Made by a program: the position numbers and the translations under genes
In this document: positions 10,251 through 57,771 of the stretch, piece by piece
Position numbering within the stretch: position 1 is the first letter of the stretch
Layout of the letters: each line of letters begins with the position of its first letter
Source: Selaginella moellendorffii
Lineage: Eukaryota; Plantae; Lycopodiophyta
DNA: 64,000 nt
NCBI RefSeq assembly: GCF_000143415.4
Contig: NW_003314263.1
Span: 2,668,041 to 2,732,040 of the forward strand
Reading direction: 5' to 3'
Notes under the pieces: model-generated
The model's database searches: none
Told to the model about the DNA's origin: nothing
Seen by the model: only the letters and a program-made list of their open reading frames with translations

Positions 10251-10550
10251 TAAATTGGACATCTACATCTTGTCTTTTACTAATTGTATGATTGGCAATA
10301 GGAACCACACAGTCCAAGAGGTGGCCGTTGTGGTAAGATTTAGTGGTGAGAATTCTACGTTGTGGCTTGAAGCTTAGCAGACACGCACTTTATTCACATG
10401 TTTTTAAGATTTAGGTTCGGGCTATTTCAACAATGACGCTATTCCAATCAAAGAAGTGAAAAGCTTAGATTTTCTGCTGCTGTAATTCTTATTCCGAAGT
10501 GACTCGAAACAACCCCAAAAGCCTGTTTAGCTGCTGAATTCCCTGGTGAG

Positions 10551-12397
10551 CTAGAAACTCGAAACAAGCGGTTGATCCTCTTGGGCAATCCCAGCAGGGC
10601 AATTGAGATCCTCGCTCCAAATCTCACTCCCCACACAGTGCCGGCATCTAAACATCCCCGCTGGATCAGCCCTCCGCTTGATCGCTAGCAATCGCGGATA
10701 GCTCGCCCCAAAGAAGGTCCTCTGCCACCGCGGCTCGTTAAAATCCCCCTCGTTCCCATACGCCCCCGATCCTGGAGTAAGATCCACTAGGAATTGATTC
10801 GCGGCACTGACATTCCTGGCCGCGATGCGCTCCTCTTCCAGATCGCCCAGTTCCATCCAGCTGATCCCGAGGATCACATGCCACAGCGCTCTCCTCCAGG
10901 CTGGATTCACAGCGTTGTTCCTCGGGCGGCTCACGGATCCACCCGCGACGAAGATCCCGGTGATGGACACCAGCGGGAATCTGTCCTGGATCGCGATGAA
11001 AGCGTCGGCGGTGGCGTTTGGCGAGGACTGGATCGTGGCTCTTGGGATGAGCCGCGAGGCGAGCAAGAGAGGATTCCAGCGGTGGCGAGCGATTGCGTGG
11101 TGGAGGAGTTGAGCTCGCGGCAATCCGGCGCGCCGCCGCACTGGATCACGAGGTGCCACTGCTGGAACGAGGGGAAATTCTGCAAGCTCGCGTTCAGCTG
11201 GATCGATGATCCACTGGACTGCGCGAATCTCTCCAGCGGCGCGAGCGTGGCGTTGGCAAAGGAGACATTCCTGTTGGGCAGGAGATAGGTCATGCTGAGA
11301 GCCGTGAGATTGCTCATGGCGAACACGCCCGACCACCCGGCCCTCTCCAGCGATGGATGGAGCTCCGTGAATCTCACCAGGAGATCCCGGAACGCTCTCC
11401 TGGACGATGCCACGAAGCTATAGCTCGCATACACGATGTTCGTGAGAGGTGGATAGAGGCGATGGGTGAGAGAGACCACGACTCCAAACGTTCCACCCCC
11501 GCCGCCGCGCAGAGCCCAGTAGAGATCGCGGTTCTGGCAGCGATTCGCGACGATCAATCGCCCATCGGCAGTGACGAGCTTGAGCTCAAGAACATTGTCC
11601 GCGGCTAGACCGTGGAGCGGCGAGAGAGGGCCATGCCCGGCGCCCATGGGATTCCCGCCAGCGCCGCCCACCGAGGAAGATCCACCGCCCACCACGACAT
11701 GGTTTCGATTGAACGCCGCCGCGTAGAGATCCTCCCACTGGATCCCCGCCCCGATGGTCATCGCCGGAGGATCCTCGGCCCGGATGGTGCAGCCCATCGG
11801 CGCGAATTTCTCGTGGTAGACGATCTCTCGCAAGTTGTGCGTCCAGATCATGAGAGCTCCCGGGGCGGTGGATCGCCCCAGGTAGTCGTGGCCGGTGTTC
11901 TTGATCACGATCCGGAGATTCCTGGCCTGGGCGAGCGCGATCGCGGCCTGGATGTGGCGGGACTCCGTGGCATTCACCGCGTAGGTGGCCACAGAGCCCT
12001 GGAAGCAAGTGGAGTTCCTGGGCGAATTGATCAAGCAGGTGAATCGGCCGAGGGCTTCCCAGTTGCTGGCTTGCATCGCGCCAGGCTGATCGGCGCGCCA
12101 GAATGGAAAGCCCCATCGCTGCTGCGCGGTCCTGCAGGCCTGCGCGTTGAAGTTGGGATCGTGGCAGGGGGAGGCTGGGGGCGAGAGCGCGATGAGGCGG
12201 CCATCGATGGATCGATTGAAATCCTGCCAGGATTGGGCGCTGGGCCAGCAGCTGCTATTGAATGCCGTGCATCGGCAGGATTGGTTCGCCTCCAACTCGT
12301 GATAGATCGAGGAGGGTGCTGCCAATTGCAAGGAAATCGCGATGATCGAGAGGAAAACAGCTAGAAATGCTGGCCTGTGGATCGTTAACGACGGCAT
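10551..12397 (-). CDS. Secreted FAD-linked oxidoreductase (FAD_binding_4 + BBE domain), fungal-type architecture; one frameshift at ~11065 (pseudogene or sequence error)
   Basis: Signal peptide; CRC...CWPS...W..FN.SIDGRLI...P.ASPCH; C.QGSV..YAVNA; IKNTGHDYLGRS (covalent-FAD His); DLYWALRGGGGGTFGVV. After the frameshift: LASRLIP...GAYGNEGDFNEPRWQRTFFG..YPRLLAIKRRADP.GMF.C..CVGSE.W. Intronless. Confidence 0.9.
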
Positions 12398-13261
12398 TCT
12401 TCTCGATTACTCGATGGAATGCTCCCAAGAGCTAGACAAAGGGATGGTCTCCCTTTCTATCGGATGGATTGGTGATGAAAAGAAATGGTGATGGGATTGG
12501 ATGAGAACGTTTTATTAATGTCTTGGACGAGTGATTTATATCGTTTCGGTGGCGAGCTTTCTAGCTATATTCTTTGAAATCCCGCGTTTCATGGATCGAC
12601 GGATCCCCCGATTTGGACTAGAGACTTTCCATCTGGCGGGCTGGCTTTCCGGACTTTGTCAAAATTTCACCCCCAACGTGAAAACATATGACTTTAATGC
12701 TCTATTGATCAGTTCAATTTTTTTTTTTTGCTTGATTTCTTACCTTTCAATCAACTTCACTTCTGGCAAAGCACATTGCCTAGTCAAAGCCGCGCCAGAG
12801 TTTCTTTTAAATTTTAAGCGTTTACCATTTCTAAGTTCTTCGAATGACGTCTAACGTGCTGTTTAAACATTTGACTTTATGATGTAAGGATAGATTTATA
12901 AGTGCTTAGCCATCTACCATCTACCTATATGCTGTTTTGATAGTCTTGTGACGCCCAACTGGAAGCATGAGACTAGTGGATGCAAAAATGTAAATTAGAT
13001 TAATCGAGACAATGGCTTCTAGAGTTATGGTTCCCCATAGTGCTTCTCAGCTAGGCGCTATGGACAAAGTCATTCAACACAATGGTCATAGCTATAAAGC
13101 CTATTGCTCACTATGACCAAGCACTACCTTCTTTCTCTTTCTCTTTGTATTTAGTTTCCACCGACACCGAGCCTTTAGTGCAAGATCACGGTAGGAGAAT
13201 CTTCTCTGATTGGAGCTATATATATTGCTACTGTGATGCCAACTCAAAACAGAAGGACTGA

Positions 13262-15280
13262 TCAGCCCACAATTGCATCTGTAAGAAGCAAATAAGGAGC
13301 GGCATTGTCTGGATCAAGCGAAGCCGCCCTCTCAGCCGCAGAAGAACCAAACTTTTGCCGGTGATCGACGCCTGTTCTCCAAGTGTTTAAGAAGCTCGTC
13401 CAAGCCACGGCACCAGGGGTGTAAGGCATGCTTGCGATGAGCTCCTCGGCCTCCCCAATCCTCCCAGCACGCCCCAAAACATCCACCAGGCACTCGTAGT
13501 GATCCACCACCGCCGCCAGCCCACGATCAAAGCCCATGGATCTCAAGTAGCTCTTGCTCTTCTCAACCAGCCCGGCATGGCTACACGCAGCTAGAACACT
13601 GATGAAAGTTATCTCGCTCGTGTCAACGCCCTCCACGTCCATGGTCTTGAGAAGCTCCAGAGCCTCCATGTTTCGGCCGTTTTGCGCGTAAACCGCGATC
13701 ATCCCATTCCAGGAGATGGTGTTTCTGTGCGGGATTGTGTCAAAGACGTGCCTGGCTCGCCCGAGGTGGCCACACCGCCCATACATGTTGACCAGGGCGC
13801 TGACCACGACCACGTTTGACTGCTGGCCGGAGTCAACGGCCCTCGCGTGGACGTGCTGACCAGCGGCGGCGCTCCCCAGCGTCCCGCATGCCTCCAGAAC
13901 GATAGGAAACGTTGTTGACTCAAGGTCAATGACCCGTTGACACATGGTCAAGAAGAGCTGAATGGCGTCCTTGCATTGACCGTTCTGGGCATATGCCTGG
14001 ATCATAGCGTTCCATGAGACAACGTCGTGAAAAGGCATTTTGTCGAAGAATATTTTAGCTTGTTCGAGATGACCGCGCTCGCCATACATTGTGATCATCG
14101 TGTTCCATGAGATGGAGTTGGGCTCTGGTATGACGGTGAAAATTTCGTAGGATTCTTCAAGATGGCCTCTTTGGGCATAAGCTTGCAACAAAGCGTTCCA
14201 AGAAACAGTGTTTCTCTGCGGCATTCTGCTGAACATCTCCTTAGCTTTTTCAGGGAGCCCGCTTTCGCCGTAAGCGGTGATCATGGCATTGAAGGATACA
14301 ATGTTTCTTTGGGGCATTTTTTCGAACAGCTCTTGTGCCGTCTCGAGGTCCCCGTTTTGGGCGTGTGCAGCAACAATGCAGGTCCACGAGAAGACATCAC
14401 CATCTGGAGATTCTTCAAACGTTTTCATGGCCTTTTCCGTATCCCCGTTTTGAAAGTAGGCTGTGATCATCACATTCCAGGAAGTGACATCGTTTTCTGG
14501 CATTTGATCAAAGAGCTCTTTAGCTTCACTGACATAGCCGTGCTGAGAATATGCCGTCATCAGCATGTTCCAGGAGAAGGAATCTCTCTCGGGCATGACA
14601 TCAAACGCCTGCTTAGACTTTTCAAGATGCCCAGTCACGGCATATACTCTTACAATGCTTGTCCACGTCACAATGTCGTGCTGCGGCATCTCGTGGAACA
14701 AAAGCAGAACCTCCTCGACATTCCCTGCTTGGACGTTTGCCTGAAGCATGAGATTCCACGACAAGACGTTTTTCTCTGGCATATTGTCAAAGAGTTGTTT
14801 AGATTCCTCAAGATGCCCACTAAGTGCATATGCAGCTAATAAAGAATTCCAGGATACTGAGTTCCACTCTGGCATTCTCTCGAATATAATCTTCGCCTCG
14901 TCCAATTGATCGTTTTGGCAGAATGCCGTCAATATTGCGGTCCACGACACAATGTCCCAGACCGGCATGCTCAAAAACACACGCTTAGCATCGGAAATAT
15001 GCCCATTATGGGCATACGCCGTAAGAAGGATGTTCCAGGAGAAAAGATTCGGCCCGTGCATGCTCTCAAACGCCTGACTAGCATCCTTGGTGCTACCACA
15101 TTTTCCATACATTTCGATTATCAGATTCCCGAGGTATCTATTCCGGCAGTACTTGCCACACAAAACTCGAGCATGGATCTTCTTGGCTTCGGAAAGGTTC
15201 CTTGAGATTCCCTGTGATTTGAGCAGCGACGCTAGGCTTTGGATCTCTGCAAGACTAGAATTCTCCCGGGAAAGTTGCAT
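13262..15280 (-). CDS. PLS-class pentatricopeptide repeat protein with a long run of short (S/SS) repeats and a terminal E-type extension; no DYW
   Basis: Tandem ~31-aa repeats (..VSWNA.I.AYAQ.G...EA..LF..MP), then HYECLVDVLGRAGRIGEAEELIASMPYTPGAVAWTSFL...AAERAASLDPDNAAPYLLL. Intronless, 672 aa. Confidence 0.95.
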   Translation of the reverse strand: MQLSRENSSLAEIQSLASLLKSQGISRNLSEAKKIHARVLCGKYCRNRYLGNLIIEMYGKCGSTKDASQAFESMHGPNLFSWNILLTAYAHNGHISDAKRVFLSMPVWDIVSWTAILTAFCQNDQLDEAKIIFERMPEWNSVSWNSLLAAYALSGHLEESKQLFDNMPEKNVLSWNLMLQANVQAGNVEEVLLLFHEMPQHDIVTWTSIVRVYAVTGHLEKSKQAFDVMPERDSFSWNMLMTAYSQHGYVSEAKELFDQMPENDVTSWNVMITAYFQNGDTEKAMKTFEESPDGDVFSWTCIVAAHAQNGDLETAQELFEKMPQRNIVSFNAMITAYGESGLPEKAKEMFSRMPQRNTVSWNALLQAYAQRGHLEESYEIFTVIPEPNSISWNTMITMYGERGHLEQAKIFFDKMPFHDVVSWNAMIQAYAQNGQCKDAIQLFLTMCQRVIDLESTTFPIVLEACGTLGSAAAGQHVHARAVDSGQQSNVVVVSALVNMYGRCGHLGRARHVFDTIPHRNTISWNGMIAVYAQNGRNMEALELLKTMDVEGVDTSEITFISVLAACSHAGLVEKSKSYLRSMGFDRGLAAVVDHYECLVDVLGRAGRIGEAEELIASMPYTPGAVAWTSFLNTWRTGVDHRQKFGSSAAERAASLDPDNAAPYLLLTDAIVG

Positions 15281-16075: not shown

Positions 16076-17191
16076 CTAGCGGTCGCTAAAAGGATATAAG
16101 CTCGAGTAGCTCTGATTTACGTGATGCTGATGAGCCACTGGAGCGAAGCCCTTCCCCGGCGCTATCACTGGATTCACTACTGCCGCTGGCGCTGGGCTCC
16201 CCACAGCTTGGCGAGCATGGACTAGAGGCGAGTCCCGGAATCTGGAAGGAGACATGGCTGCCCGAGCACTGCGAGGAGAGTCGTCGAGAAGAGCCGAGTT
16301 CCGGGTCGGGCTCCTGGATCCCGACCGTGGCTGCTGCTCGGAGAAATGCTGCTGCCTTGCAATGCTGATAGCACTTCCTTCCGGAGGCGAGCGAAACACT
16401 GCAGTCACGGAGGCTTGATCCGGCACGAACGGGGTCGAGGAGAGTGGGATGCAAGCCGGCGGTAGTCTCTGCGGGGACATGGAGCGAGCGACGGGAGTGA
16501 AGTGGAACTCGTGGTTGCCGAAAAGAATGGCGGCCTCGTCGTCTACGTCCAGAGACTCCGGAAGTTTGCTCGCGTCCACCCCCTGGAAAGCTGCGGCAAC
16601 GTCCATCCCTGGTCCTAGATTATCCCTGGCGGCTCTCATCGCTGGCACGAGTGGAACTCCGATCCCGTTGAGAGCATCGATGAACTGCTGATCCGAGCTT
16701 CTTCCAGTCGCCGAGTGGTGGTCACCAAAGTTATCTCCACTGCTTTGCTGCTGGAAGAGAAACACTCGCAGCCGAGCAGCTGGATCTCTTTGCATCAACC
16801 TGTCGTACTCTTCCATCATGTTGTCCAGGTCTTCGTCGGACTTTACCGAAACCAGCGCGTCTAGATCCTCACCTGGGAGCTGGTACTTGAGCAGCATGGA
16901 TTTCCCGGTCAGCTTTCGCAACTTTTGGAGGAGCTCGCGCAGAGTGATGGCTCTGTCCACGACGACTATCCGGGTCTCTCCACCCATGTATCTCAGCTGG
17001 CTGTCATTGGGCCGAGGAAGGATCTTTCCACCATAGCTACACATGAGCTTGACTCGGATGTTGCTTATCTCGTCGGACTTTGTGGAGGAATCTGACCTGG
17101 GAGACGAAGCAGCGACTCCAGGAGAAGGAGAAAGCTGCCATAGCTGCGAGCCTTGTCCGGAATCGCCCTCGAGCTTCTCCGAGTGACCCAT
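16076..17191 (-). CDS. Plant PB1 (octicosapeptide/Phox/Bem1p) domain protein
   Basis: VKLMCSYGGKILPRPNDSQLRYMGGETRIV...LKYQLPGEDLDALVSVKSDEDLDNMMEEYDRL...RLRVFLF, followed by a Ser/Pro-rich tail. Confidence 0.93.
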   Translation of the reverse strand: MGHSEKLEGDSGQGSQLWQLSPSPGVAASSPRSDSSTKSDEISNIRVKLMCSYGGKILPRPNDSQLRYMGGETRIVVVDRAITLRELLQKLRKLTGKSMLLKYQLPGEDLDALVSVKSDEDLDNMMEEYDRLMQRDPAARLRVFLFQQQSSGDNFGDHHSATGRSSDQQFIDALNGIGVPLVPAMRAARDNLGPGMDVAAAFQGVDASKLPESLDVDDEAAILFGNHEFHFTPVARSMSPQRLPPACIPLSSTPFVPDQASVTAVFRSPPEGSAISIARQQHFSEQQPRSGSRSPTRNSALLDDSPRSARAAMSPSRFRDSPLVHARQAVGSPAPAAVVNPVIAPGKGFAPVAHQHHVNQSYSSLYPFSDR

Positions 17192-41113: not shown

Positions 41114-42379
41114 CTATGGCGTCCACACACGAACAGTCCCATCGATGGAGGACGTGACGAGCATTGGCTCGGTTTTGTGATACGCAATGCTCGTTACCTG
41201 GAAGGCGAAAGACTGTGTGTCAAGAACACGAGAGAAAAAGGATAGAATTTCCAGTTTTGCTTACTGCTGAAGCGTGCGCTTTGAAACTCGACACTACGGA
41301 TGAATCCACGAGATCCCAGTAGTAAATGCGACCGTCCTCGGAGCTACCAACAACATGAGCGTCGGTGTTTGTCAAGCAACTATCAGTTTTGTAGGACTGC
41401 GCAGAGAAACGAACTGGAATGTTAAAGAGCGAGGAGAGATTTGTGTAGTGCCTACCTTGTTGATGTGTCCTTTGTACTCTTGAAGCAAATCACCAGTTTC
41501 TCTGTGAAAAAAGCAAGGAGAGATTACAACAAAAAAGGAGTTTGTAAGCTACCTGTCAATCAGACGAAGTGTTGAATCCAAACATCCAGCCAAGGTGCAT
41601 TTTCCATCGTGCGAGAGGGTGACGCTATTTATTGGATGACCAAGATCATCTCTATACACTCTGATCACAAAGACAAAACCAAAGAAAGTGAGCCAGAATC
41701 CTTTTTGCAAGGTAACGAGCAGTACCTTCCAGCACGGATATCAAAAGTTCGAATGGATCCATCCACACTTCCAGCGATAATTTCCGTCCTTGTCATACAC
41801 AGGGAAGTCACACTGTCTGAAAATGCCTCAATCACCTGAGAGTGATACCTTAGTTGCCTTCTCGAAGAAAAAGAGAAGAAAAAAAAAGAAATACAATTTA
41901 CCTGGATCGGTTCTATGCTGTGAGATCGACAATCAAACGCTCGCACCGATCGATCATATCCTCCAGAGACAATCACCGTCGAGTTCTCACTAAACTTCAC
42001 GGTATTCACCTACACCACTGTTTCATGAGCTAGATCAACCCCCAAAAAAAGGTTTCCTCCTTTTCAGTACCTCACTGTCGTGGCCACGGAATTTACGAAT
42101 CACGCGTCCGGTGGGAACATCCCAGTAGAAGAGCTGACGATCCGCGCCGCAAGAGCAGAACTTGGAATTATCGGCGACGACGGCCACATCGCGAACCTCC
42201 CGGGCGTGCGCATTGTAGCTCTTGATCCGCAATCCCTTCTGTGGATTCCAGAGGCAGAGGACGCGATCGCGACCGCAGCTAATGCAGTAATTACCGTCGG
42301 AGTTGAATCGTACTGCCAGAACCGGACCTTCGTGGCCGCGCAGCACCACCGCCTCTCGCCTTGGCAGCTGATCCGCCAT
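41114..42379 (-). CDS. WDR83: WD repeat protein 83 / MORG1 homolog; multi-exon
   Basis: MADQLPRREAVVLRGHEGPVLAVRFNSDGNYCISCGRDR...GRVIRKFRGHDSEVN.VKF...SGGYDRSVRAFDCRSHSIEPIQ...GSVDGSIRTFDIRAG...GSSEDGRIYYWDLV...SSIDGTVRVWTP*. Telo-box-like 'aaaccctaa' lies just upstream. Confidence 0.93.
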
Positions 42380-43159
42380 AGCCAAATGTAAACCCTAAAT
42401 CCTACCTTTAGGGCATAAAGTTAAAATCTTCATATATACTTAAAATCATTAAATTTAATAATGGTAGTTCATGACTATTAGCAATATTGCATCATGAGTA
42501 TAAGGGTTTACACTAATAAACTCTATGCCTTTATGATATATATATAAAATTAAAAAGTTATGTACATTTTTCTATTGACCAAAGATGCAATAAATGTGTA
42601 TAGATGCATTTAATGCTAATCTCATAATACCCCTTCTTTTACTGCAAAAGAATAGTTAGAATCAATTGTAATTTTTTCCTTTGTTTGAGTTGATGGCATT
42701 ACCTTAATGCTTTTGTTAGTGCATTTCAAAGATACTTTTCAACTCAACTCATAGCAATTTGCATTTCTTTTTGTGAGTAGTGATGTATGTTTGTTTTTCT
42801 TTGCATTTTTGTTTTGGAGCTTGAGACATACAGATTTCTAGATTTAATCTTCATTTAGATATACATTTTTGGAAAATGGATTCTTCTTTATTATTGACAT
42901 TTTCATTTGTGGATGACATCCTTCATTTTGCATACAGGACATATGTGCCCCAGTGAGTTGCCAAACTGGTATGGTATAAATGTAAGGATGGACATATATG
43001 GTGATATAAAAAAGAGGAGAGAGAGTAGGGTCACTACCTTTATACCCTTTTTTGAAGCAAGGAAATGAAATATCTTTCCACTACCATCAATGGATTTTTT
43101 AGCTAAGGATTTTGTGTTCTTAGTGGTTATTATGTTTGATGTTTTATTCTCAATTAAAT

Positions 43160-44620
43160 GGTATTTCAATTCTTTCGGATAATGGTTCTATATTTATGGT
43201 TGAGGCATTTTATATTTTGACATCTTAGATTGGGATATAGCATATTTTTGCAAGTGATTATCATTCACAAATAAATGGTTAATAACTCATAAAAAATTGT
43301 AAATTATATATAATTTTAGTATTGATATTGAAATGATAATTTGTCATTTCTTCAGACACAACAATGTCCCTATGCCTACCTAAAATAAAAGAGTCATACT
43401 AATTAAAGTGTAGAATGAAGATCAATAGATAGATAATCATCTAAATTATTCCCTATAAAACAAAAGATATCATTACTAAAAATGTAAATACTAAAACAAA
43501 AAGTCATTTGTAAATACTAGCTCTACATCTTATGGATAAACAAATCTAACTATAGATATTAAGTCTATCAGACATTTAAATTATTGACCATAACTTCGAA
43601 AGCATCTCCCATACTTGATAGTGTGTTCAAGCTAGCCTTTTTGACCAAGGGTTTATAACAACCGAGATTAAGTGTCTTTATCTCATTCACCATATCTTCA
43701 GTGCCATTTGTAGTAAAGTGTTTAAGTTAGATATTGTAAAAAATCAACTCCCCAAGGTGTTGTAAGTTAAAGGATCCCTAAAACCATGACTAAAATGATA
43801 AAGAGTTTATTGAATGAGACCAAGTCTAAGATTGAGTCCAAGATCTACTTTAAGACTGAGTTTGAGAGTGAGTCCAAGATCGAGTTCGAAACCAACTTCA
43901 AGACTGAGTCCGAGATCTGAGATCCAAGATCAAGTCTGAGACCAAGTCCGAGATCAAATCCGAAACCGAGTCCTAGGTTGGGTCCGAGATGGAGTTCGAG
44001 ACCAAGTTTGAAGCCAAGTTCGAGATCAAGTCTAAAATCAAATCCAAATACTAATACAAGTCGTGAGGTGAAAGTTCAAAGCGGGGCTGTAGGGGGTTCC
44101 AAAAGTATAGTAAGAATAATGAGATCCAAGAATTAGTCTTGAAGGAACTCTTTAATGGTACTTCTAAATTGACTTGAGGTTAAAATTCAAAGTTAGGGGC
44201 CTCAAGTGGGAGTGAGCATGGAGTTAGGTGGTGTTAGAGAGGCCACCTGAGGAAGTGCTTAAGAGTAGCTCCCACTCCCAAAAGGGAAACTATTTGTGGT
44301 GTTCTTAGCTAATATGGAGTGGTGCCCTATTTGAGTACCTTGCAACTTATTGATCTTTGTTCCTTTCTACGAGCTTGGGCCTTCCTTTCGAGAGGGAAAT
44401 GGGGGAGTAAAGGTACTTATACCAAGCCTTTACACCATGGTTTTTCCCCCTGGTGTCTCAAAATAAGTGATGCACCCAAGGCTTGGGAATTAGAAGGTCT
44501 TATGATCAAGTCTTGTTGTACTAGGATATTAGAAATTTAAAGACTTGTTGTATTTGGCTGCTTGTGCATTCAAAGAGTGTAATTGAACTTTAAGTCCACT
44601 CCAACCCAAGGAGGGGGATT
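43160..44620 (+). mobile_element. Gypsy relic: integrase-core fragment, hexamer-repeat segment and polypurine tract
   Basis: 43170-43290 aligns with the integrase segment at 57375-57485 (SDNG..F...LGI.H.F...YH). GAGACC/GAGTCC-type repeats at 43815-44060. PPT-like AAGGAGGGGGA followed by TG at ~44608-44621. Confidence 0.6.
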
Positions 44621-45109
44621 GTGATAGAATTTGGTAATCCATGAACGAATGAGTAACACTTCATTCCCTATATAGTGAGTCATTGAAACTAAGTAAGACC
44701 AAGTAGAAGGTGGTACAATATGTAGGAACCTTGGCAAGGGAACTTAATTAAGGATAAGATAGTGGTGGTTGGATAGGCAAGGTAAGCTGACAAATTGAAA
44801 AAGAAAAATTTATGGCTTACAAATATACTAGATTTTCATACTAAACACTCTAACTGTGCATTACGAGTCTGAGGCATCCCCCACTTGGTGGTGTGCCCAA
44901 GCCAACCTTCTTACTAAGAGTCCATAACTATCGAAATATAAATATCTTTATACTCCAAACCATCACTATGCATTAGCAGGTTGGGACTTGAACCCAAGCA
45001 CTAGAAAGTTAGGACTCAAACTCAACTTTTGTATATGCATCTATAGACAGCATCATTTATGATGCCTTGTGTGACTCCCCACGCCAATACACTAATTTAT
45101 ACTCAATAT

Positions 45110-45298
45110 TGTAAGCAACCAAAAGGAACGACTTGAGAGACGATCCATAAATGTTCAAATATAAAGAGAAAGGGGCCATGAATAAAAGTTTTCCAATCGG
45201 TTAAGGGTTTTGGGATATTTGGGGTTAAACTGAATAATATTGCGCTAGGTGACCTCTTAGGAAGTCTAAACTCAGGAGTTTACATTTGGTATCAGAGC
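45110..45298 (+). mobile_element. 5' LTR (45110-45284, TG...CA) plus tRNA-iMet primer-binding site (45287-45298)
   Basis: TGTAAGC...GGAGTTTACA, then TT and TGGTATCAGAGC. The LTR is homologous to 8380-8555. Confidence 0.85.
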
Positions 45299-46684
45299 AG
45301 TCTTGGGTCCGACTCTATTGGTTGGCTTAAGGGAATCACACCACATGTTGATTGACATCTGGCAGGTCTAATTTACTATAAATCACTATTTAGAAACCTA
45401 GTTCTTTTAAGCTTCAAAATCAAATTAGTTGATTAACTTGTGATTATACATAGACTCCTCCATATTTAGCCCCATGGGCCACCCCTTTTGAAGTTAATAT
45501 TATTCCTTCAATTTGCCAATTTCGCTTAGAAAGTCACCTAACTAGCATAACATGATTTTATACATAAGTGTGAAAGTCCTCAAATATCAACTTTCATTCA
45601 TAACAATCTTTTTGAACACTCAAGAATTATTTCCTTAATCTTGATAGCTTCACCTCATGGCAAGCTTCAAAGCCATGCTTCTACTGCACCATTTTGATTT
45701 TGTGCATTCCTATGAACCATTTATATTTGTCTTTCTAGATACTAATCCACTTAAAATTGTCTTTAGGAATATTAAAGGAACTCTATCTTTTAGATTGCTA
45801 AAGTTTCTCCTTTCGCAAACTTTTTAATTGTCATATGGTTTAACATAGGTAATTCTATATTTTAAAGTCACCATAGCACCACAATTATTAGTAATAACAC
45901 CTTCAACCACCCATTTAATTTTCCATTCCCAATTTACATAACTATTCTTGGCTATACCTTTCGATTTTTATGGTTTGGTTCTATCCCTTTATTATTTATT
46001 TTTTGCCTTACACAATCTCTTTAGTTATTCTCCTCTAAACTATTAGGGCAATTTTGCACTTTTTACTATGCATTAGCAAGTATTTTTATGAATGAATTTA
46101 CTCAATTCCCTAAAGAGTGGTTCTTCAATTTAAATATGCTCACCTTGTAATCCCATGCACCAAGATTCACGTCACTACTCATGAGCTTCACTATACCTAT
46201 TACTATCTATGCCAAAATCTTTTTGGTTTTATCCACTTTGGATAGTCAAAATTACCCCATCTCTAGTTTTTATCAACCTTGGATATTATATAGCATCTTC
46301 TATCCATTTTTCTTTAAAGACGTAATCTCTTGAGCCTTATCTATTACCCCCATAATACCCAAACACCACCTCTTTAGCATTTTTAAGGTGCTTATATGTT
46401 TCTATGGACTTCCCATATAATAAACATTTCCTATTAATACTAACCCATTATATCTTAACATAAACACAACATCCTTTAAGAGATGTATTTAACCTCCTTA
46501 TCTAACTAAGAACTCTTAGGAAGTTAGTTTCCACTATTCTAACAAATTATTCTAAACTTTTATTTAGTTGCTTCATAGTTATTATGTTTTACAACTCATT
46601 ATCAGTACTTCCACATCTCCATTAATATTTGGTACAAGCACATAAATCTAATTATATCCAAGATATTCTAACTCCATTTCCATT

Positions 46685-46972
46685 ATGCTTTATTTCGTTA
46701 AAGTGGGACTTATTCAGTAAAGTGGGACATTAATTAGCATGTGTCCACATGCCATTTCCTAGTACTTAATTAATATTTATTAATATTTCTATCAGTTTTT
46801 TAATTTAATTTTTTATATTTCACAATATTATAACACAAAATCATATGAAAAGTTTTTAATTTATAAATTATAAAGTTAAAACTTCAATTTTTTATTGTTG
46901 TTATAAAAATGGCATGTGGCCACACACCATAAGTGGGATAATGAAAAGTCCCACTTTAACGAAATAAAGCAT
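46685..46972. mobile_element. 288-bp MITE with perfect 27-bp TIRs and a 4-bp TSD (CATT)
   Basis: ATGCTTTATTTCGTTAAAGTGGGACTT at 46685-46711 and its exact reverse complement at 46946-46972. CATT on both flanks. A second inverted pair lies inside (CCACATGCCATTT / AAATGGCATGTGG). Confidence 0.88.
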
Positions 46973-47612
46973 CATTGGGTTTTTTTTGGTTCTTATAAAG
47001 TTACCAACTTGACCTCAAAGCATCATCCTTTGAGACATTTAAGGTTTCCACCCTATTAGCTTCGATGAGAATATTAACTCATTCTTTGAGTACACCCTTA
47101 ACTCCTTATATTATTCTGACATTTATTAAAGGTAGCCTTAACTACCATTTCAAGGATATATGTCCTTATCTATATTTAGCTTTCCATAGTCATTAACTTT
47201 AGTTTCAAATTCATGAGCACCAGCCTTAGTTATATGAAAATAATTCTATGACTCCTTTATTATTTTAGAGTTTTTATCCCTCTTGTGATCTCAAATATAA
47301 TTGATTACCACAACCACATTAGCCAATTTATTAAGTCAAACACTTATATAGATAACATCTTCAACTCTCTAAGGAAAACCTTCTACTATTCCCAAGATCC
47401 TAAAATAATTCTCTTATTAGCCCCTTTCTATCCACCACATTGCCTACACATTTATGTATGATCTCAAGTGGAGAGTTATGCCCTCTCGACATGCTACTCC
47501 TCAAGGATAAACCCACTTTAAGGGTCTTTTGATACTAATATTAAGTGGTGATATACTTAATCACCAATAAGAGTTGGACTAAGCAATAGTTTTGATATCA
47601 AATTATAAATGA

Positions 47613-48440
47613 CTAATTTTTCCTTTTTATTTTAATCGCTTAATTACACCTTTGACCACTTGGAGGAATCCCATTTATAATCTCCATAAGTCCAATTCCC
47701 AACTTAGAGACTAATTAGCCCCATAAATAACCTTTATGCCACTCTACCTTTGCACTTGGTCTAAATGTTCCATGTGTTTAATCCTATGATAGACACTCAC
47801 AGGTACTACTAACATATCAATCCATTACACTAAAGTTATATCCATTCACCTTTGTCTCATTAGTAACCCAAGACCACTCATACCATAATCTCATCTTTCA
47901 AAGAATGGGTTATCCATCCATGAATGGTCATCCTATAACCACATTTTAACATCTTTAAAATGCCCAAAGATATAAAAAATATACTTCCCTAATATTCCTT
48001 CTTCAATCCCTATTAAGTTCCTCTTTATTTATGGTGGTGCTTGCCAACACTACCATTGGGTCAAAACCCAAAGGTCTTACTAAATCCCATTGACATCTGG
48101 GACTTTCTCACCATATAATCATACCTTTGATCACTATACAAGATATTTACTCTTCTTCCTTTCTATAATCTAGAACTTTAGGATGACATTTTTGGACACC
48201 ATGGCTCTATGCGAATTTCGTGGGTGCTCCCCCCACCTTTTGCCTCTATGTGCCTTAGCCATATAGCTAGAGCAACATTCTAACATTCTGATAAGCTATA
48301 CTAAGTATCCAAATAGGTAGTGCTACCCACACTTGAATTGGGAGCATCAACCATTCAATCTCCTAGGGGAACTAGAGTTGACTCCTGAACACTTCACCAA
48401 GCTACCCCACTTATTTATTTGTGTTCACTCTAGCCTTGTG
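47613..48440 (+). repeat. Older, AT-shifted copy of the repeat at 57780-58590
   Basis: Colinear ~800-bp similarity, e.g. 'acctttgcacttggtc', 'ccattcacctt', 'cacccatggc'-like, 'gaacacttcaccaagctacc'. Confidence 0.8.
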
Positions 48441-48729
48441 TTCCAAGATATCTAGGCTATAGAAGACTTTAATCAAATCATAATTGCTAATTATTTACTA
48501 TTCTTGGATCATAGTATTAGCCTTTGCAAAAGTGCATAATCCCTCTTTGTGTAAGTCCTTATAGATTTTGTTTAAGCTTTGTTTTTCCATTTTGTTGAGC
48601 ATTTTCCCTCAATTTGGAAGTATTTGTTAAGTTGTTATGCTCTTTACTACATCTTTAAATCTACATAATAGAAAAATATTTTTGAGTTACATGTTATTTG
48701 TTTATGATTTGGGGGACCAAACCACGTGT

Positions 48730-51400
48730 GGGGAGAGGTGACAGTGCAGGATGTAATTGAGGACTTTTCTAATGTTTTTCCATTTGAACTTTCTCATGAG
48801 TTATCTCTATTATAAGGTGTGGAGCATAATATTACGTTAAAGCCAAGGATGAGGCCAATTTACTAATATTCATTTTGGTTGAGTTATGTAGAAGTTTAAC
48901 AACAAATCAAGGAGTTACTTGAGTTTGGATTTACTCTAGTCTTGCTCATAAAGAAGGATTATTTAATGCAGATGAGTATTAATTACCATGCCTTAAACAA
49001 AAAGACAATAAAGGATATATTGCCAATATTGTATGTAGATAATATCTTAAACAAGTTTGATAAAGTGTGAGTGTTTACCACGATTGACTTGAAGAGTGGA
49101 TATCATCAAATTGCAATGGATGATGCATTTATCTCTAAGATGATATTTAACATGAGCTTTAGGCATTTTTTAGTTCACAGATATGCCATTTGGTTTGACA
49201 AATGCATTAGCTATATTTGCATTATTTTCATGAGTTTTAGAAATTTTCTTGGACGATATTCTTGTTTTTAGCAAGAATATGGAAGAGTATAAAGTGCATT
49301 TGTGCAAAGTTCTCTTGTTACTACATAACAGTAAACTTTACATGAAGAAGAGAAAATGTGAATTTGCAAAGTTGAAGATAGAATACCTAGGTTATATTGT
49401 GACATCTAGAGGTGTAAACAAATCCAAGAAAGGTGGCTATAGTGGAGAATTGGCCTCCACCAACTGTAGTGGCTAAGTTATTTATTTTCTTTAGTATGGC
49501 TAATTAATACTAATGTAGATAGCTATTCCTTTGACATAGTTATTATGTAAAAACTTGCCATTCAAATGGAAGAAGCCATAGGAGGATAATTTTGTAGCAT
49601 TGAAATGGTTGTTAAGTAAGGCTTTAGTGCTTTACATTGTTAATCCATTAAAACCTTACGAGGTGATGTGTAATATAACTGGCCATACACTAAGAATTCT
49701 CATGTAAGAGGGATAATTTGCATATGAGAGTCAAACTTTAAATTATATGAAGTAACAATATTCCATATGTGAGCAACAGTTACTCTTTATTATTCATGCT
49801 TTGCAAATATAAAGGCACTATCTTTATGGTGCGGTGTTCATAGTGTTAAATAGATAATAAACTCCATAAGTTTGACTATATAGCGAGCTTGCTTACATGT
49901 TCAACTTCTTCTATGTGAATAGATATACAAGAGGTTTGAGAAGTTTCCTTTTGAGCATCGTTTATGGAAATTGAATGTAATGGCAAATACTTTATCTCAT
50001 GTTCATCATATAACATATTACAAACACAATTTTGTTATCATTTGAGTAAGATGGTTAGTAAATTTGGGTAATTAATTGAGTATGCTTAGACTCAAAACAC
50101 TAAGTTAGTTTTGAGCCTAGATGAAAACACCTTTCTTATTGGTGGATGGGATTCTTTACTATAATGTATATTTGACATAGGTAGATGCATTGATTAATTA
50201 GATTTTTTTCCACTATTATGATTATTCAAATGTTAGTTATTTTGGGGGGAAAAAGACATATGAGTTGATTAAGCACAATTTTTATTGAAGGAATATGAAA
50301 GCTAATATCCTTAAATATTGCAAATCATTCAATCTCTATTAGTAGGTAAATGTGTCATAAGAGAACTAGGGAGGACTTTTGCAGCCTATGCCTATTCCTT
50401 AGAGTTGTTGGTGTAATACTTCTATAGACTTCTAGAGCTAAAAGGAGCAAGTGTGAGTTATAGTCAATTGATTGACAAAGTATATATGGTTGTTAACTAT
50501 TCAAAAAACTATTACTGCCTTAGACTTAGTTGCAATCTACTTAGAGAAGCTCTTTTTTAATTTTAGTTTGCCAAAGGATATAATTAATGATTGAAACTCA
50601 AAGTTCACTAATGGATTTTAGAAGAGCTTTATAAAGACTATGTAAGTGATTTTAAAACTCTCAAATGGAGATCATCGTCAAATAGACCAAATATGTGAAT
50701 TAGGTGGTGGAAGATATATTATACTTTAGCATTGGCCAAAGGTAGGGACAATTGGATTTATATTTTTTATTAGTGCAATTCAATTACAACAATAATAAAT
50801 ATAGTGAAAGAAATTAAGTCCTTAATTTATCATATTTGGAAGGCATGCCTAAAAAATATTGGAGTTGGAATTATATTTGACTAAGGATGTTTGTAATAAA
50901 TGTGATTTATAGGTGACAAATTTAAACACAAAACTTGTTGAGATTTTTGTGATGTGCAAACAAAAGTTGTAGATAGCTCAAAATAGGGTGGAGAAGTTTG
51001 CTAATAAGCATCACCAATTTTAAAAATATAAGGTGAGGAATTTCATCTTTGTGCAAATGATCTTTCTGTTAAATAAGTTTACATGAAGTGTTAAAACACA
51101 TTGGTAAGGCAATTTATTAGGTGTGACTGCCAACTAGGGTGAAAATTCATCTAGCATTTTATGTTATCCAATTGAAAAGTGTACTATCTCCGAGTGAAGG
51201 GCCTAATGCCTCCTTGATGTATACAGTTATAAAAGATGGATCATGAGCTAGAGCAGAGTTCCCTAAAAAGGGTGATCATGGATACAAATCATCATTGAAA
51301 TAAAAACTTTGTTGACAAGGAGGAATTGTTAGGCATTTTGACCATATGGTCAATGTTGGTTAAAGTGAAATTCATGATGTATTAGGGTTCTAATGGATGA
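48730..51400 (+). mobile_element. Degenerate Ty3/Gypsy pol (RT-RNaseH-integrase) with PPT and 3' LTR start
   Basis: DFSNVFPFEL...VEHNITL; FTTIDLKSGYHQI; LDDILVFSKNMEEYKVHL..V...L....LY.K..KCEF....IEYLGYIV. Many stops. PPT ACAAGGAGGAA precedes TGTTAGG at 51327. Confidence 0.85.
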
Positions 51401-51912
51401 AACCTCCTTTTAAGGTTTTTAGGATATTGTAAATTAAACATTCTAAAGGACTAGGTTCGGAGATTTCCCTAAAGTATAAATTAAAGAGCTTATATAATTG
51501 AATTGAAAAGAAGATACTATGGAAGGTACATTTAACATACATTCTACTCATATAATATATAAAAACATTTAATAGTATTTTTAATAACATAAATACTTTT
51601 AGAACTGTTAATTATATATAATATTTATTACATTATTTCTTAGGCTAGTATATATACATATGTATTAGTCTTTACAGTTGCATAAATATATAAAGCCACT
51701 TACAGAAATATATTTTTATCTTTTTCCTATTGACAAAATATTAGCTTCATGTAGACTAAATTTCTACAGTTAAAAGCATATATAAGAAAGTATAATTGAA
51801 TTTTCTTATATCCTTATTAATATTTCTAAAGATATTAAAATATTTTGATAATACAATATTTATTCTAATGATTTAGAAATTTAAATCAGGCTTTATAACC
51901 TTTCTATTTATC

Positions 51913-52822
51913 ATGCATATTCTTATTATTTTTTCTTCTGTTTTATATTTTTTTATTTTTTTATTGGGAATAAAACCAGCAAAAATAGAATGGGGAGATA
52001 ATAACACTTTAACTCATGAAGAAATTGGAATGATTATTAATACAGGATTTTATAACCTTTTTAACACAAATTAATTCAAGAAATAAAAATATTACATATC
52101 CGTCAAATTATGAAAATTTATATATTGTTAATTTTGGAAGAGGAGATGCTCTTTTAACTTTTCAACGTTTGAATGGTTCTCCACCATTATGTTCAGCTGG
52201 GAATACAAATTCACAACAAGGAATTGTTGGTGATACTTTAAGAGCTGGATTAAGATCGCTAGTAATAAATCACTATGATGATATGTTACAAGCACGATCT
52301 GAAGAATGTAGAATCACTTCAAGAAAATATCAATTTGAGTATACAACTTTTTTTCGAAGACATGATTCAGTAAACACACAATTATTAAATCTTAAGATTA
52401 AAGATATTGAAGATAATGATTATACCTGTGATATCGCATTAACAACATTAAGTGCTGGGTTTAAGAATAATAAACTCTATAAAGGTGAGTTTTTAGTTTC
52501 TCCAAATGGTAAAAATATGTTATATTTAAGTACAAAATGCAAACTTAATTTATATTCTGGAAAAAACATTTTATGGGCATCAAATAATGATGATTACTAT
52601 GGACATTGCATAGCTATTTTGCTAAATAATGGTAACTTTATAATATCTAAGGATTCTAAGTTAGAATTATGGAGTATAAATAAGTATTGCAAGCATTGTT
52701 ACCAATTCACATTTCTTACCATTCAAAATGATTGTAATTTAGTTATTTATGAATCAAAATCACCAAATAAGGTTTGGTGGGCAACAAATACCTATGATTA
52801 TTATAATTGTTTAAAAGGCTAG
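51913..52822 (+). CDS. Putative secreted protein: unknown N-terminal domain plus C-terminal bulb-type (GNA-like) lectin; one frameshift at ~52055
   Basis: ATG 51913 gives MHILIIFSSVLYFFIFLLGIKPA-KIEWGD... A +1 shift near 'tataacctttttaac' joins the long frame, which is open from ~52046 to 52822. The C-terminus has LYKGEFLVSPNG...LWASN...LLNNGNF...LWS...IQNDCNLVIY...WWATNT (one intact QxDxNxVxY site). Confidence 0.75.
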
Positions 52823-55800: not shown

Positions 55801-57771
55801 TTTGTTTTTGCATCAATTATTATTCGTTAAATAAAGTGACAATCCTCGATATGTACCCTTATTATCACAATATTAATCTTCTAGGTCATTTAGGAGGAAA
55901 TTGTTGATTCACCAAGTTAAATCTTACTTCTGGGTATTAGCAAGTGCCAATAGCTGATAAAAATGTTCCTAAAACTGTTTTTTATACACCATTTGATTTA
56001 TATAAGTTCTTATTGATGATGTTTGGTACGAACAACTTTCTAATGGATTATGGATGAAGTTTTTTACTATATGCCAGAGATGACTACTGACTTCATCATT
56101 AATAGTCTAATCCACTCAAAAAGGATGTGGGAGGAACACATCTATAATGTTTGTAAGGAGTTGGATCTATTGTGGGAAGTTGGTTTAAAGTTGAAATAGT
56201 CAAAGTGTGTGTTTATGTCCAAGGACATGACTTATCTTAGGTGTTATATTTCTCGTGAAAGTTTACAAGTTGATTATGACAAAATTGTGGCTATTCTTAA
56301 GTTCCCTACTCTAAAATGTGTGAATGATATGCAACACTTCTTAGGTAAGGTGCAACATCTGAACCATTTCATTAATCATCTTTTTGATTATATTGAACCA
56401 TTATAAGTATTATTAAAATTGTCAACATCGTCTTTCATTTGATTGGTGAACTATGAGCAAACGTTTACAGATCTCAAAGAATTGTTGACTACTTCTTTAG
56501 TTTTGATATATCTTAACTATACTCAACTTTTCATTTTATGCATAGATGCTTTTGTTATTGATATTCAAAGTATGTTAATACAAAAAAGCTTGAGTGTGCA
56601 TAGTCAATGTTATCCCATTGCATACATTAGCTGTATATTACAACAAACGGAGATGAACTATTCCATGACAGAGAATTAGCAATAGTTTAGGTTTTGAGAA
56701 ACTTCATGTATATTTATATGGTTTTTAGACATTATTAGAAGGTGATGATGTTGCAGTTACTTTGTTATTAAAGTGGAAGAACATAGCTGGCTATATTGCT
56801 CAATGCGCTTTGAAGCTTAAGATATATAATTTTAATGTTATTTATCATCTGGGGAGTTCTATGGCTAGTGCCAATGCCCTTTCTCAAGCTCTTCTTCCTT
56901 CTTCACTCTATTCTCATGTTTCTTATAAATTTGTTATTCTAGCATCTATGGATTTTTAGACGAAGATTTTATATTATCAGCAATTGTTGTATTTGATTGT
57001 TAGTATCAATTAAGTGCAAAACAAAATTTACCTTCTCTTGATGAGGTTTATGAGGCTTAAAAAGTTGAGCCGTGGATCCAAAAGCTTCATGATGGGTTTG
57101 AAAATCTTGCATCATCGTGTGACTGAGAAGTTACGTAAGTCTTTCTATTGGCTAGAGATATGATATAATATTATCTAGTATATAAGTAGCTGCATTTGGT
57201 GCCCAACTCATAACACTCCCCCTTGTGCTGCAAAAAAACAGTTAGAGTTAATTATAATTTCCCATTCGTTTGAGTTGGTAGTATTTGATATGATAGGGTT
57301 TTTTCCATAATCAACTGCTAATAGGATGCTTCCTCCTTAATCAAGTGGTGTTCTAACATTCCTGTCTGAAGTAAATTCTTTCAGATAATGGTCCTATATT
57401 TATGGTTGAGGTATTTCACGTTTTAACATCTTGATTGGGGATATACTACATTTTCTCAAGTGCTTATCATCCATTAGATGGTTTGGTGAAACGGCTCATT
57501 TTAACCTTTAAAGGGATGATTGTGACGTACATGAACTTTCAATATTCGGATTAGGATAGTTATTTGCTATATCTTTGGTACACATATATCACAGTGTACA
57601 GAGTTTTATTGGTGCTTCACTATATAAAATCTTATATAGTCGTGATCTCATACTACCAACGGAGTTGAGTTTACCTTTGCAATTGCCACGAACTACTGAT
57701 GTTAAGTTTTGGGATTAGTATTTGATAAACATTCTTCCACTAGTCCAAGTAAAGTTTGCCAAATAACTAGG

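What the first reader, a model, noticed from the sequence alone, without database searches (positions are those of the whole stretch)
10551..12397. Fungal-type secreted FAD oxidase in a plant genome: candidate horizontal acquisition
Seen: N-terminal CRC...CWPS...W..FN...GRLI...P...PC, C.QG.V..YAVNA, KNTGHDYLGRS...L.IWTHNL and C-terminal C..CVGSE.W. Known: this architecture is characteristic of fungal isoamyl-alcohol-oxidase/ZEB1-like secondary-metabolism flavoproteins. Seed-plant BBE-like enzymes instead carry RSGGHDYEG and a C.TVG.GG second FAD link; here that position reads SSSVGGAGG, implying monocovalent FAD. The gene is intronless and GC-rich. One frameshift in a TC dinucleotide run (~11065-11072; removing 2 nt gives GILLLASRLIP) looks like slippage or an assembly error.
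Basis: partly seen in the sequence, partly recalled or inferred. Interest (0 to 1): 0.7.

Follow-up and report, generated by a model that had tools for sequence, protein, structure and literature searches.

The report
Fungal-type flavin oxidase gene in Selaginella
This spikemoss (Selaginella moellendorffii) gene encodes a secreted flavin oxidase of a family otherwise centred on fungi, most likely gained from an early fungus by the ancestor of vascular plants and later lost in seed plants. Its apparent frameshift is one base missing from the reference sequence, not a broken gene.

Summary
Window 12397..10551 (- strand) is Selaginella moellendorffii SELMODRAFT_78233, a FAD_binding_4 + BBE oxidase. 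Its best solved relatives are the fungal MtVAO615 (E 5.5e-66) and MtVAO713, not the plant BBE-like enzymes (about 1e-19).

Contigs from four public runs of four studies all carry the extra base. That gives an intact 615-aa ORF on a colinear, intronless transcript of about 2.04 kb (10447-12482). The JGI model hides the shift with a false intron.

In an outgroup-rooted tree:
- Selaginella and fern copies form one clade (94/90).
- That clade is sister to Mucoromycota + Basidiobolus + bdelloid rotifers, inside the fungal radiation.
- Moss copies sit apart, with chytrids and tardigrades.
- A single plant clade is rejected (p-AU 7e-65).

No seed plant appeared among the top hits. Transfer from a fungus is the best reading. 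The direction is inferred, and the substrate is unknown.

The scan had already flagged several paralogs of this family elsewhere in this genome. A moss member is already published as fungus-derived.

The parts
10551..12397 (-). Coding sequence of the oxidase (SELMODRAFT_78233). It gives 615 aa once the one missing base is counted. As written in the window it splits into a 488-aa and a 261-aa ORF.
11070..11072 (-). Frameshift site. The window reads GGAATCCTCTC where four public runs read GGAATCCCTCTC, so one C is missing from the reference.
   Evidence: the paralog alignment changes frame at 11072. table 4: 'put in behind 11070: G' in X1, X2, X15 and X20, in every contig that covers the place.
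12398..12482 (-). 5' untranslated region, up to the end of the transcript contigs
   Evidence: table 8: contigs of X1, X2, X15 and X20 all end at 12482, with no depth beyond.
10447..10550 (-). 3' untranslated region
   Evidence: table 8: contigs of X1, X2 and X15 end at 10447 (X20 at 10419). No depth at 10300-10380.
12317..12397 (-). Likely signal peptide (about residues 1-27, MPSLTIHRPAFLAVFLSIIAISLQLAA)
   Evidence: Read from the sequence. Inference only: no signal-peptide predictor was run.
12106..12277 (-). N-terminal Cys-rich extension typical of the MtVAO615/713-type subfamily (C41, C43, C50, C78, C88)
   Evidence: aligned to MtVAO615 residues 25 onward; these Cys are conserved across the eukaryotic family and absent from the generic bacterial BBE-like outgroup.
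11549..11983 (-). FAD_binding_4 domain (residues 139-283)
   Evidence: PF01565, 71.2 bits, E 9e-20.
11888..11890 (-). His170 codon (NTGHD), predicted 8-alpha-N1-histidyl link to FAD
   Evidence: aligns with His157 of MtVAO615; invariant in all 86 rows. The link in MtVAO615 and MtVAO713 is described in PMC6017366.
11678..11680 (-). Ser240 codon, at the place of the 6-S-cysteinyl link (Cys222 of MtVAO615), so there is no second covalent bond
   Evidence: Ser240 aligns with Cys222 of MtVAO615 and Ser231 of MtVAO713; 5 of 12 Selaginella paralogs have Cys here.
10638..10763 (-). BBE (berberine-bridge-like) C-terminal domain
   Evidence: PF08031, 39.5 bits, E 5.6e-10.
13262..15280 (-). Neighbouring intronless pentatricopeptide-repeat (PPR) gene. 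This plant-type context argues against fungal contamination.
   Evidence: PPR, E 5e-118.

Best explanation
The locus is an intact, transcribed, intronless nuclear gene of Selaginella moellendorffii. It encodes a secreted, disulfide-rich, glycosylated VAO/BBE-type flavoprotein oxidase of the MtVAO615/MtVAO713 ('isoamyl-alcohol-oxidase-like') subfamily. Inferred mechanism: FAD is fixed by a single 8-alpha-N1-histidyl bond to His170, and Ser240 stands where bicovalent members have Cys. A still unknown substrate, most likely a secondary alcohol on a bulky lipophilic molecule, gives a hydride to the flavin. O2 then re-oxidises the flavin and H2O2 is released outside the cell. The apparent frameshift is one C missing from the reference sequence. 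The published JGI model papers over it with a false intron. The gene belongs to a multi-copy family shared by Selaginella and ferns. Its sister group is early-diverging fungi (Mucoromycota and Basidiobolus, plus bdelloid rotifers). The family most likely entered the ancestor of vascular plants from such a fungus, had already duplicated before lycophytes and ferns split, and was lost in seed plants. Mosses hold a separately derived clade.
For: Identity: 100% match to SELMODRAFT_78233 on a 4.46-Mb scaffold. Pfam finds FAD_binding_4 + BBE. The best solved structures are MtVAO615 (5.5e-66) and MtVAO713 (1e-53).
Intactness and expression: all contigs from 4 runs of 4 studies carry the extra base. 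They are colinear and stop at 10447 and 12482, with zero depth in the flanks. The corrected ORF is 615 aa and aligns end to end with paralogs (63%) and with Calcarisporiella (45% over 571 aa). Of 14 variants in other samples, 10 are synonymous, against 24% expected (P = 2.7e-4).
Cofactor: His170 is invariant, and Ser240 aligns with Cys222 of MtVAO615 and Ser231 of MtVAO713 (PMC6017366).
Origin, from the careful LG+C20 PMSF tree rooted on bacterial BBE-like enzymes:
- Selaginella + fern clade 94/90, sister to Mucoromycota + Basidiobolus + rotifers (union 90/86).
- Other fungal phyla lie outside, and a bacterial clade lies outside all eukaryotes.
- Mosses group with chytrids and tardigrades (100/99).
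The AU test rejects one plant clade (delta lnL 174, p 7e-65). Ferns nest among the Selaginella paralogs: none of 200 bootstrap trees makes Selaginella one clade. A Cys pair (C420/C426) is shared by the vascular-plant clade, half of the Mucoromycota rows and 3 of 5 chytrid rows, and is absent from the moss clade, Dikarya and bacteria. No seed plant, liverwort, hornwort or alga appears in the top 120 of three searches. The flanking genes are plant-type: PPR and PB1.
Against: - The plant clade is sister to the Mucoromycota/Zoopagomycota clade, not nested inside it. The fungal backbone is an unresolved polytomy, and the eukaryote root branch has only 83/57 support. Donor and direction therefore rest on breadth of distribution, not on topology alone.
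- Absence from seed plants is judged from lists cut at 285-333 bits. A divergent seed-plant member scoring lower would not have been shown.
- The runs are only guessed to be RNA by the tool, and contigs drop rare variants. A frameshifted allele in the sequenced individual is therefore not excluded.
- No enzyme activity is known for the closest solved relative, MtVAO615, so the substrate class is a guess carried over from MtVAO713 and its kin.
- Pocket residues differ from MtVAO615 (Tyr449 to Phe483, Asp451 to Ala485).
- Secretion is read from the sequence only.
Confidence: 0.7

Rival explanations
1. Vertical inheritance. The family is an ancient eukaryotic gene kept in fungi and in a few plant and animal lineages, and lost everywhere else.
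For: The plant clade is sister to its fungal partner clade, not nested in it, and the deep backbone is unresolved.
Against: A single plant clade is rejected (p-AU 7e-65). Mosses and vascular plants each pair with a different fungal group, alongside tardigrades or rotifers. Vertical descent would need two ancient paralogs plus losses in all algae, liverworts, hornworts, seed plants and nearly all animals and protists.
Confidence: 0.07
2. The gene is a real pseudogene: the one-base loss is a true mutation in this genome.
For: The window sequence itself carries the frameshift. Contigs drop rare variants, so the frameshifted allele could exist unseen (notes).
Against: Every contig from 4 runs of 4 studies has the intact form, and two of them match the reference at every other base (0 other letters over 2037 nt in X1 and X2). 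Variants are biased to synonymous changes. The site is a short C run, a typical place for a base-calling compression.
Confidence: 0.08
3. Contamination or misassembly: a fungal (endophyte) fragment sits in the plant assembly.
For: GC content is higher than the surroundings, the gene has no intron, and the best non-plant hits are fungal.
Against: The gene lies on a 4.46-Mb scaffold, 865 bp from a plant PPR gene, with a PB1 gene beyond. It has about 18 Selaginella gene models as kin, on many scaffolds. Fern relatives lie on chromosomes of 180-200 Mb. The transcript is seen in 20 runs of 8 studies. The nearest fungal protein is only 45% identical.
Confidence: 0.01
4. The direction is reversed, or there was an intermediary. 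An early vascular plant gave the gene to zygomycete-grade fungi, or both received it from a third party such as a bacterium or a virus.
For: The topology is a sister relationship. A bacterial VAO615-like clade exists.
Against: The family occurs in all major fungal phyla, with deep fungal branches outside the plant + Mucoromycota union. The bacterial clade lies outside all eukaryotes on a long branch (1.23) and keeps Cys at the second FAD link in all 8 rows.
Confidence: 0.08

Closest known systems
MtVAO615 (PDB 6F72) and MtVAO713 (PDB 6F74), VAO-type oxidases of Myceliophthora thermophila (Ferrari et al. 2018, PMC6017366)
   Same: Both share the two-domain FAD_binding_4 + BBE build, the N-terminal Cys-rich extension, the NTGHDYLG histidine FAD link, the conserved His255 and Tyr547/Glu550 near the flavin, and the C-terminal CxxCVGSE motif. 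E-values are 5.5e-66 and 1e-53 for the N-terminal 441 aa, and 7e-15 and 2.5e-14 for the C-terminal 173 aa. Like MtVAO713, this protein has Ser at the second-link position.
   Different: MtVAO615 is bicovalent (Cys222), whereas this protein has Ser240. Pocket residues differ (Tyr449 to Phe483, Asp451 to Ala485, and no Cys450 partner). The host is a vascular plant. No substrate is known for MtVAO615. MtVAO713 oxidises ricinoleic acid, according to the paper.
Canonical plant BBE-like oxidases (Phl p 4, AtBBE-like, PpBBE1, THCA synthase, berberine bridge enzyme)
   Same: They belong to the same VAO/PCMH superfamily, have the same Pfam domains, and are secreted flavin oxidases.
   Different: They are only distant: E 6e-20 to 1e-12, and only the FAD domain aligns. 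They lack the N-terminal CxC...CWP extension, and most are bicovalent. The window gene does not group with them.
Fungus-derived FAD_binding_4 + BBE gene of Physcomitrium patens (Li et al. 2018, PMC5982333). It is probably also the 'FAD-linked oxidase (2)' of Yue et al. 2012, PMC3493653.
   Same: It appears to be the same enzyme family, and it is another non-seed plant with a horizontal origin already proposed. The moss proteins P0121 and P0124 are 37-38% identical to the window protein.
   Different: The moss genes form a separate clade with chytrids and tardigrades. The 2018 paper states that there are no homologs in other plants, and the 2012 paper names CFB bacteria as the donor. I could not match the old accession XP_001770677.1 to P0121 or P0124.
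Microbial terpene-synthase-like (MTPSL) genes and other fungus-to-non-seed-plant transfers
   Same: They show the same distribution pattern: bryophytes, lycophytes and ferns but not seed plants, with fungal sister groups. See PMC12890914; the MTPSL comparison itself rests on my own knowledge.
   Different: It is a different enzyme family. No linkage to such genes is seen in this window.

Membership tests
VAO/PCMH flavoprotein superfamily, BBE-like group | FAD_binding_4 (PF01565) domain followed by a C-terminal BBE (PF08031) domain | tested here: met
   71.2 bits (cut-off 26.4) and 39.5 bits (cut-off 20.6).
VAO/PCMH flavoprotein superfamily, BBE-like group | Histidine that forms the 8-alpha-N1-histidyl FAD bond | tested here: met
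   His170 aligns with His157 of MtVAO615 and is invariant in 86 rows. The bond itself was not shown.
MtVAO615/MtVAO713-type ('isoamyl-alcohol-oxidase-like') subfamily | Closest solved and named relatives belong to this subfamily, and alignment is over the full length | tested here: met
   A Cordyceps 'isoamyl alcohol oxidase MreA-like' protein (P0114) is 36.5% identical over 608 aa.
MtVAO615/MtVAO713-type ('isoamyl-alcohol-oxidase-like') subfamily | N-terminal Cys-rich extension (CxC..CWP..PC) and C-terminal CxxCVGSE | tested here: met
   the Cys are conserved in the eukaryotic family.
Bicovalent (6-S-cysteinyl, 8-alpha-N1-histidyl) flavoproteins | Cys at the position of MtVAO615 Cys222 | tested here: not met
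   Ser240. The position is variable within the family: 5 of 12 Selaginella paralogs have Cys.
Flavoprotein oxidase (O2 as acceptor, H2O2 as product) | Fast re-oxidation of the reduced flavin by O2, and a defined substrate | not testable with these tools
   Shown for MtVAO615 and MtVAO713 only (PMC6017366).
Canonical seed-plant BBE-like family | Groups with plant BBE-like enzymes by sequence | tested here: not met
   74 bits against 226 bits for MtVAO615. The top 120 hits contain no canonical plant BBE-like protein.
Horizontally acquired gene (fungus to plant) | Physically integrated in the recipient genome and expressed | tested here: met
Horizontally acquired gene (fungus to plant) | The recipient clade branches inside donor diversity with support, and vertical topology is rejected | tested here: inconclusive
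   The plant clade is sister to Mucoromycota + Basidiobolus + rotifers (90/86), inside an unresolved fungal backbone. Plant monophyly is rejected, p-AU 7e-65. The direction is not proven.
Horizontally acquired gene (fungus to plant) | Patchy distribution in the recipient kingdom, absent from seed plants and algae | tested here: inconclusive
   Only Selaginella, Adiantum, Ceratopteris, Physcomitrium and Ceratodon are named among the top 120 hits of three searches. The lists are truncated, and no plant-genome search tool was available.

The most novel reading that the evidence does not exclude
The same secreted fungal oxidase family was captured repeatedly and independently by organisms that share the moss-and-soil habitat. 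A zygomycete-grade fungus would have given it to the ancestor of vascular plants and to bdelloid rotifers. A chytrid-grade fungus would have given it to mosses and to tardigrades. Each recipient then expanded it. That would mark the family as an unusually transferable, adaptive extracellular oxidase, for example for defence or for handling a widespread fungal or plant metabolite. It would also date one transfer to before the split of lycophytes and ferns.
Probability: 0.45. Interest if true: 0.6.

Novelty: new member of a known kind. Interest (0 to 1): 0.45.

Why it matters
Transfers from fungi into early land plants are few, and each well-supported case helps to show what the first land plants borrowed from their fungal partners. 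This case offers three things:
- a clear enzyme with a solved fold and a predicted single covalent FAD link;
- a family history: duplication before lycophytes and ferns split, then loss in seed plants;
- parallel captures by mosses, tardigrades and rotifers.

In practical terms, the public gene model EFJ36443.1 is wrong. It replaces 65 true residues with 47 out-of-frame ones, and the reference lacks one base. The subfamily is a biochemical orphan, because MtVAO615 has no known substrate. The plant copies therefore offer a new way to look for its chemistry.

Tried and rejected
- **Intron in place of a frameshift.** The only GT..AG candidate across the frame overlap (11149-11041, 109 nt) has the wrong phase, and the transcript contigs are colinear. 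Rejected.
Contradicted by the paralog alignment and by the reads.
- **Bacterial origin of the metagenomic clade next to mosses.** A pattern scan of 185,579 prokaryote genomes with P0148 found no relative. A member of the clade lies on a compact eukaryotic contig.
- **Profile scan of prokaryote genomes.** It did find a bacterial VAO615-like clade, but that clade falls outside all eukaryotes.
- **Literature.**
  - The first search timed out.
  - Searches for Selaginella/lycophyte/fern HGT with FAD or BBE terms, for ARB_02478 and for isoamyl alcohol oxidase found nothing on the Selaginella/fern genes.
  - The Plant Cell 2025 HGT review does not mention this family.
  - Ma et al. 2022 (Mol Plant) is not held, so its list could not be checked.
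  - The supplement of Yue et al. 2012 is not held.
- **Not done.**
  - The large representative search: it carries no taxon names, so it cannot test absence from seed plants.

Full report
**What is there**

The window is from Selaginella moellendorffii. The 5' ORF matches SELMODRAFT_78233 (EFJ36443.1) at 100% identity, on a 4.46-Mb scaffold. On the - strand, an ATG at 12397 opens a 488-aa ORF. A second frame runs from 11336 to the stop at 10551. Pfam finds FAD_binding_4 in the first (E 9e-20) and the BBE domain in the second (E 5.6e-10).

The neighbours are plant-type. An intronless PPR gene lies at 13262-15280 (E 5e-118), and a PB1-domain ORF at 16079-17191. The gene is therefore not a fungal contaminant.

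**The frameshift**

tblastn of the intact paralog P0003 (62-63% identical) covers its residues 26-430 on 12277..11072 in one frame. It covers residues 431-588 on 11072..10599 in another frame, with no residue lost. This predicts that one base is missing between GGA AT and CCT CTC.

Contigs from four public runs belonging to four studies were laid on 10300-12700. All of them carry one extra G on the + strand behind 11070, which is a C on the gene strand (table 4). In two of these runs the 2037-nt contig shows no other difference from the window.

With that base the ORF is 1848 nt, or 615 aa, with one terminal stop. It aligns end to end with paralogs and with fungal proteins.

The JGI model (597 aa) avoids the shift with a false intron. 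It replaces 65 true residues (VSFANATL...ATAGI) with 47 out-of-frame ones (WIIDPAEREL...HRWN).

**Expression and constraint**

The contigs are colinear with the genome, so the gene has no intron. They stop at 12482 and at 10447 (10419 in one run). Depth is zero in the flanks in all four runs. That pattern fits a transcript of about 2.04 kb, not genomic DNA, although the tool only guesses that the runs are RNA. Twenty runs of eight studies hold most of the stretch.

Fourteen single-base variants appear in two of the runs. Ten are synonymous and four are conservative replacements. Only 24% of random changes would be synonymous (binomial P = 2.7e-4). The gene is therefore under purifying selection.

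**What the protein is**

The best solved relatives are the Myceliophthora thermophila oxidases MtVAO615 (E 5.5e-66) and MtVAO713 (E 1e-53). Plant BBE-like enzymes such as Phl p 4, PpBBE1 and THCA synthase reach only 6e-20 or worse, and only over the FAD domain.

- **First FAD link.** His170 aligns with His157 of MtVAO615, the 8-alpha-N1-histidyl link. It is invariant in all 86 aligned sequences.
- **Second FAD link.** Ser240 aligns with Cys222 of MtVAO615, the 6-S-cysteinyl link. It also aligns with Ser231 of MtVAO713, which is monocovalent in the crystal (PMC6017366). This position is variable in the family: 5 of 12 Selaginella paralogs, and all 8 bacterial relatives, have Cys.
- **Residues near the flavin** are kept: Tyr172, His255, Tyr547 and Glu550.
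- **Pocket residues of MtVAO615** are changed: Tyr449 to Phe483 and Asp451 to Ala485.

The N-terminus looks like a signal peptide. There are 12 N-glycosylation sequons and 14 Cys, most of them conserved in the family. Secretion is my inference.

According to the paper, both fungal enzymes are true oxidases. MtVAO713 oxidises a secondary alcohol (ricinoleic acid), and no substrate was found for MtVAO615. The proposed mechanism is hydride transfer from an alcohol to the covalently held flavin, followed by re-oxidation with O2 to give H2O2. This is carried over from the relatives and is not shown for this protein.

**Relatives**

Three searches were run, with the window protein, a moss protein and a fern protein as queries. 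Among plants they named only:
- Selaginella, with about 18 gene models. The assembly is known to hold two haplotypes (my own knowledge), so there are probably fewer loci;
- ferns: Ceratopteris and two Adiantum species, some on chromosomes of 180-200 Mb;
- mosses: Physcomitrium and Ceratodon.

All other named hits were fungi of all major phyla, bdelloid rotifers and tardigrades. No seed plant, liverwort, hornwort or alga appeared. The lists stop at 285-333 bits, however, so a divergent member could have been missed.

A profile scan of prokaryote genomes found a small bacterial clade with full-length similarity, plus generic BBE-like enzymes, which I used as the outgroup.

**Tree**

A careful IQ-TREE analysis (LG+C20+F+G4 by PMSF; 86 sequences, 593 columns), rooted on the generic bacterial enzymes, gives the following:
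- The bacterial VAO615-like clade (100/99) lies outside all eukaryotes (83/57).
- The fungal backbone is unresolved.
- Selaginella and ferns form one clade (94/90).
- That clade is sister to Mucoromycota + Basidiobolus + rotifers (95/87). The union has 90/86 support.
- Ferns nest among the Selaginella paralogs. No bootstrap tree makes Selaginella a single clade, so the family had duplicated before lycophytes and ferns split.
- Mosses form a separate clade (100/100), sister to two chytrids plus tardigrades (100/99).

Forcing all plant sequences into one clade costs 174 log-likelihood units (p-AU 7e-65).

A Cys pair (C420/C426) is present in every Selaginella and fern row, in about half of the Mucoromycota rows and in three chytrid rows. 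It is absent from the moss clade, Dikarya and bacteria. This supports the vascular-plant-to-zygomycete link independently of the tree.

**Reading**

Vertical descent would need two ancient paralogs and losses in almost all eukaryotes. Contamination is excluded. Transfer from an early-diverging fungus into the ancestor of vascular plants, followed by loss in seed plants, is the simplest account. Mosses would have acquired the family separately.

The direction is inferred from the breadth of the family in fungi. The plant clade is sister to its fungal partner and not nested in it. The high GC content (61.5%, GC3 76%) says nothing about origin at this age.

**What is known already**

- Li et al. 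[quoted passage not shown]
- Yue et al. 2012 list two P. patens 'FAD-linked oxidase' genes as derived from CFB bacteria (PMC3493653).
- Both probably refer to the moss clade seen here, but I could not match the accessions.
- I found no paper on the Selaginella/fern clade. Ma et al. 2022 could not be read.
- This scan has already flagged several paralogs of the family elsewhere in this genome, with the same reading. One of those notes says that among plants the family is found only in Selaginella and ferns. The moss clade found here amends that.

**Verdict**

This is a further case of a known kind of event: a fungal gene in non-seed plants, from a known enzyme family. The new points are the resolved frameshift, the wrong public gene model, and evidence for at least two plant acquisitions.

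Noticed in passing
P0121, P0124, P0073, P0131 (moss proteins); tree: Moss members of the family form their own clade, sister to chytrids (Powellomyces, Gaertneriomyces) plus tardigrades (Paramacrobiotus, Hypsibius). They are far from the Selaginella/fern clade, which suggests a separate acquisition.
   Followed up: partly
P0018, P0084, P0145, P0240, P0245 (bdelloid rotifers); P0118, P0135, P0139 and others (tardigrades): Two groups of moss-dwelling micro-animals carry multi-copy sets of the same fungal oxidase family on large contigs. Each is allied to a different fungal group.
   Followed up: partly
L001, L002, L004-L007, L009, L011: There is a bacterial clade of full-length VAO615-like oxidases, mostly in metagenome-assembled genomes (Halioglobus, Acidimicrobiaceae, Kofleriaceae, Sphingomonas horti). 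All have Cys at the second FAD-link position. The clade branches outside all eukaryotic members.
   Followed up: partly
L081:5001-6845: The unnamed metagenomic clade next to the moss/chytrid/tardigrade group lies on a compact eukaryotic contig. The contig carries a split ribosomal L5e gene, an IGPS-PRAI fusion and a GBP gene, so it is not bacterial as an older paper might suggest.
   Followed up: partly
window 10551-12397, model P0002 (EFJ36443.1): The public JGI gene model uses a false intron to cross the missing base. It contains 47 out-of-frame residues in place of 65 true ones.
   Followed up: yes
P0029 (Selaginella, 717 aa); P0145 (rotifer, 776 aa): Some family members carry extra Pfam domains in their models: SWEET/MtN3 (PF03083) in P0029, and Sec7 plus F-box-like in P0145. 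These are either fusions or merged neighbouring genes.
   Followed up: no
window 12189-12221: In three runs, other and more deeply covered contigs match only this 33-nt stretch (the conserved GRLI..PP..PC region) and then run on unlike the window. They are probably transcripts of paralogs.
   Followed up: no
window 42000-62000: This is a long AT-rich stretch (GC 27-37%), in contrast with 41-56% in the first 42 kb. It was not examined.
   Followed up: no
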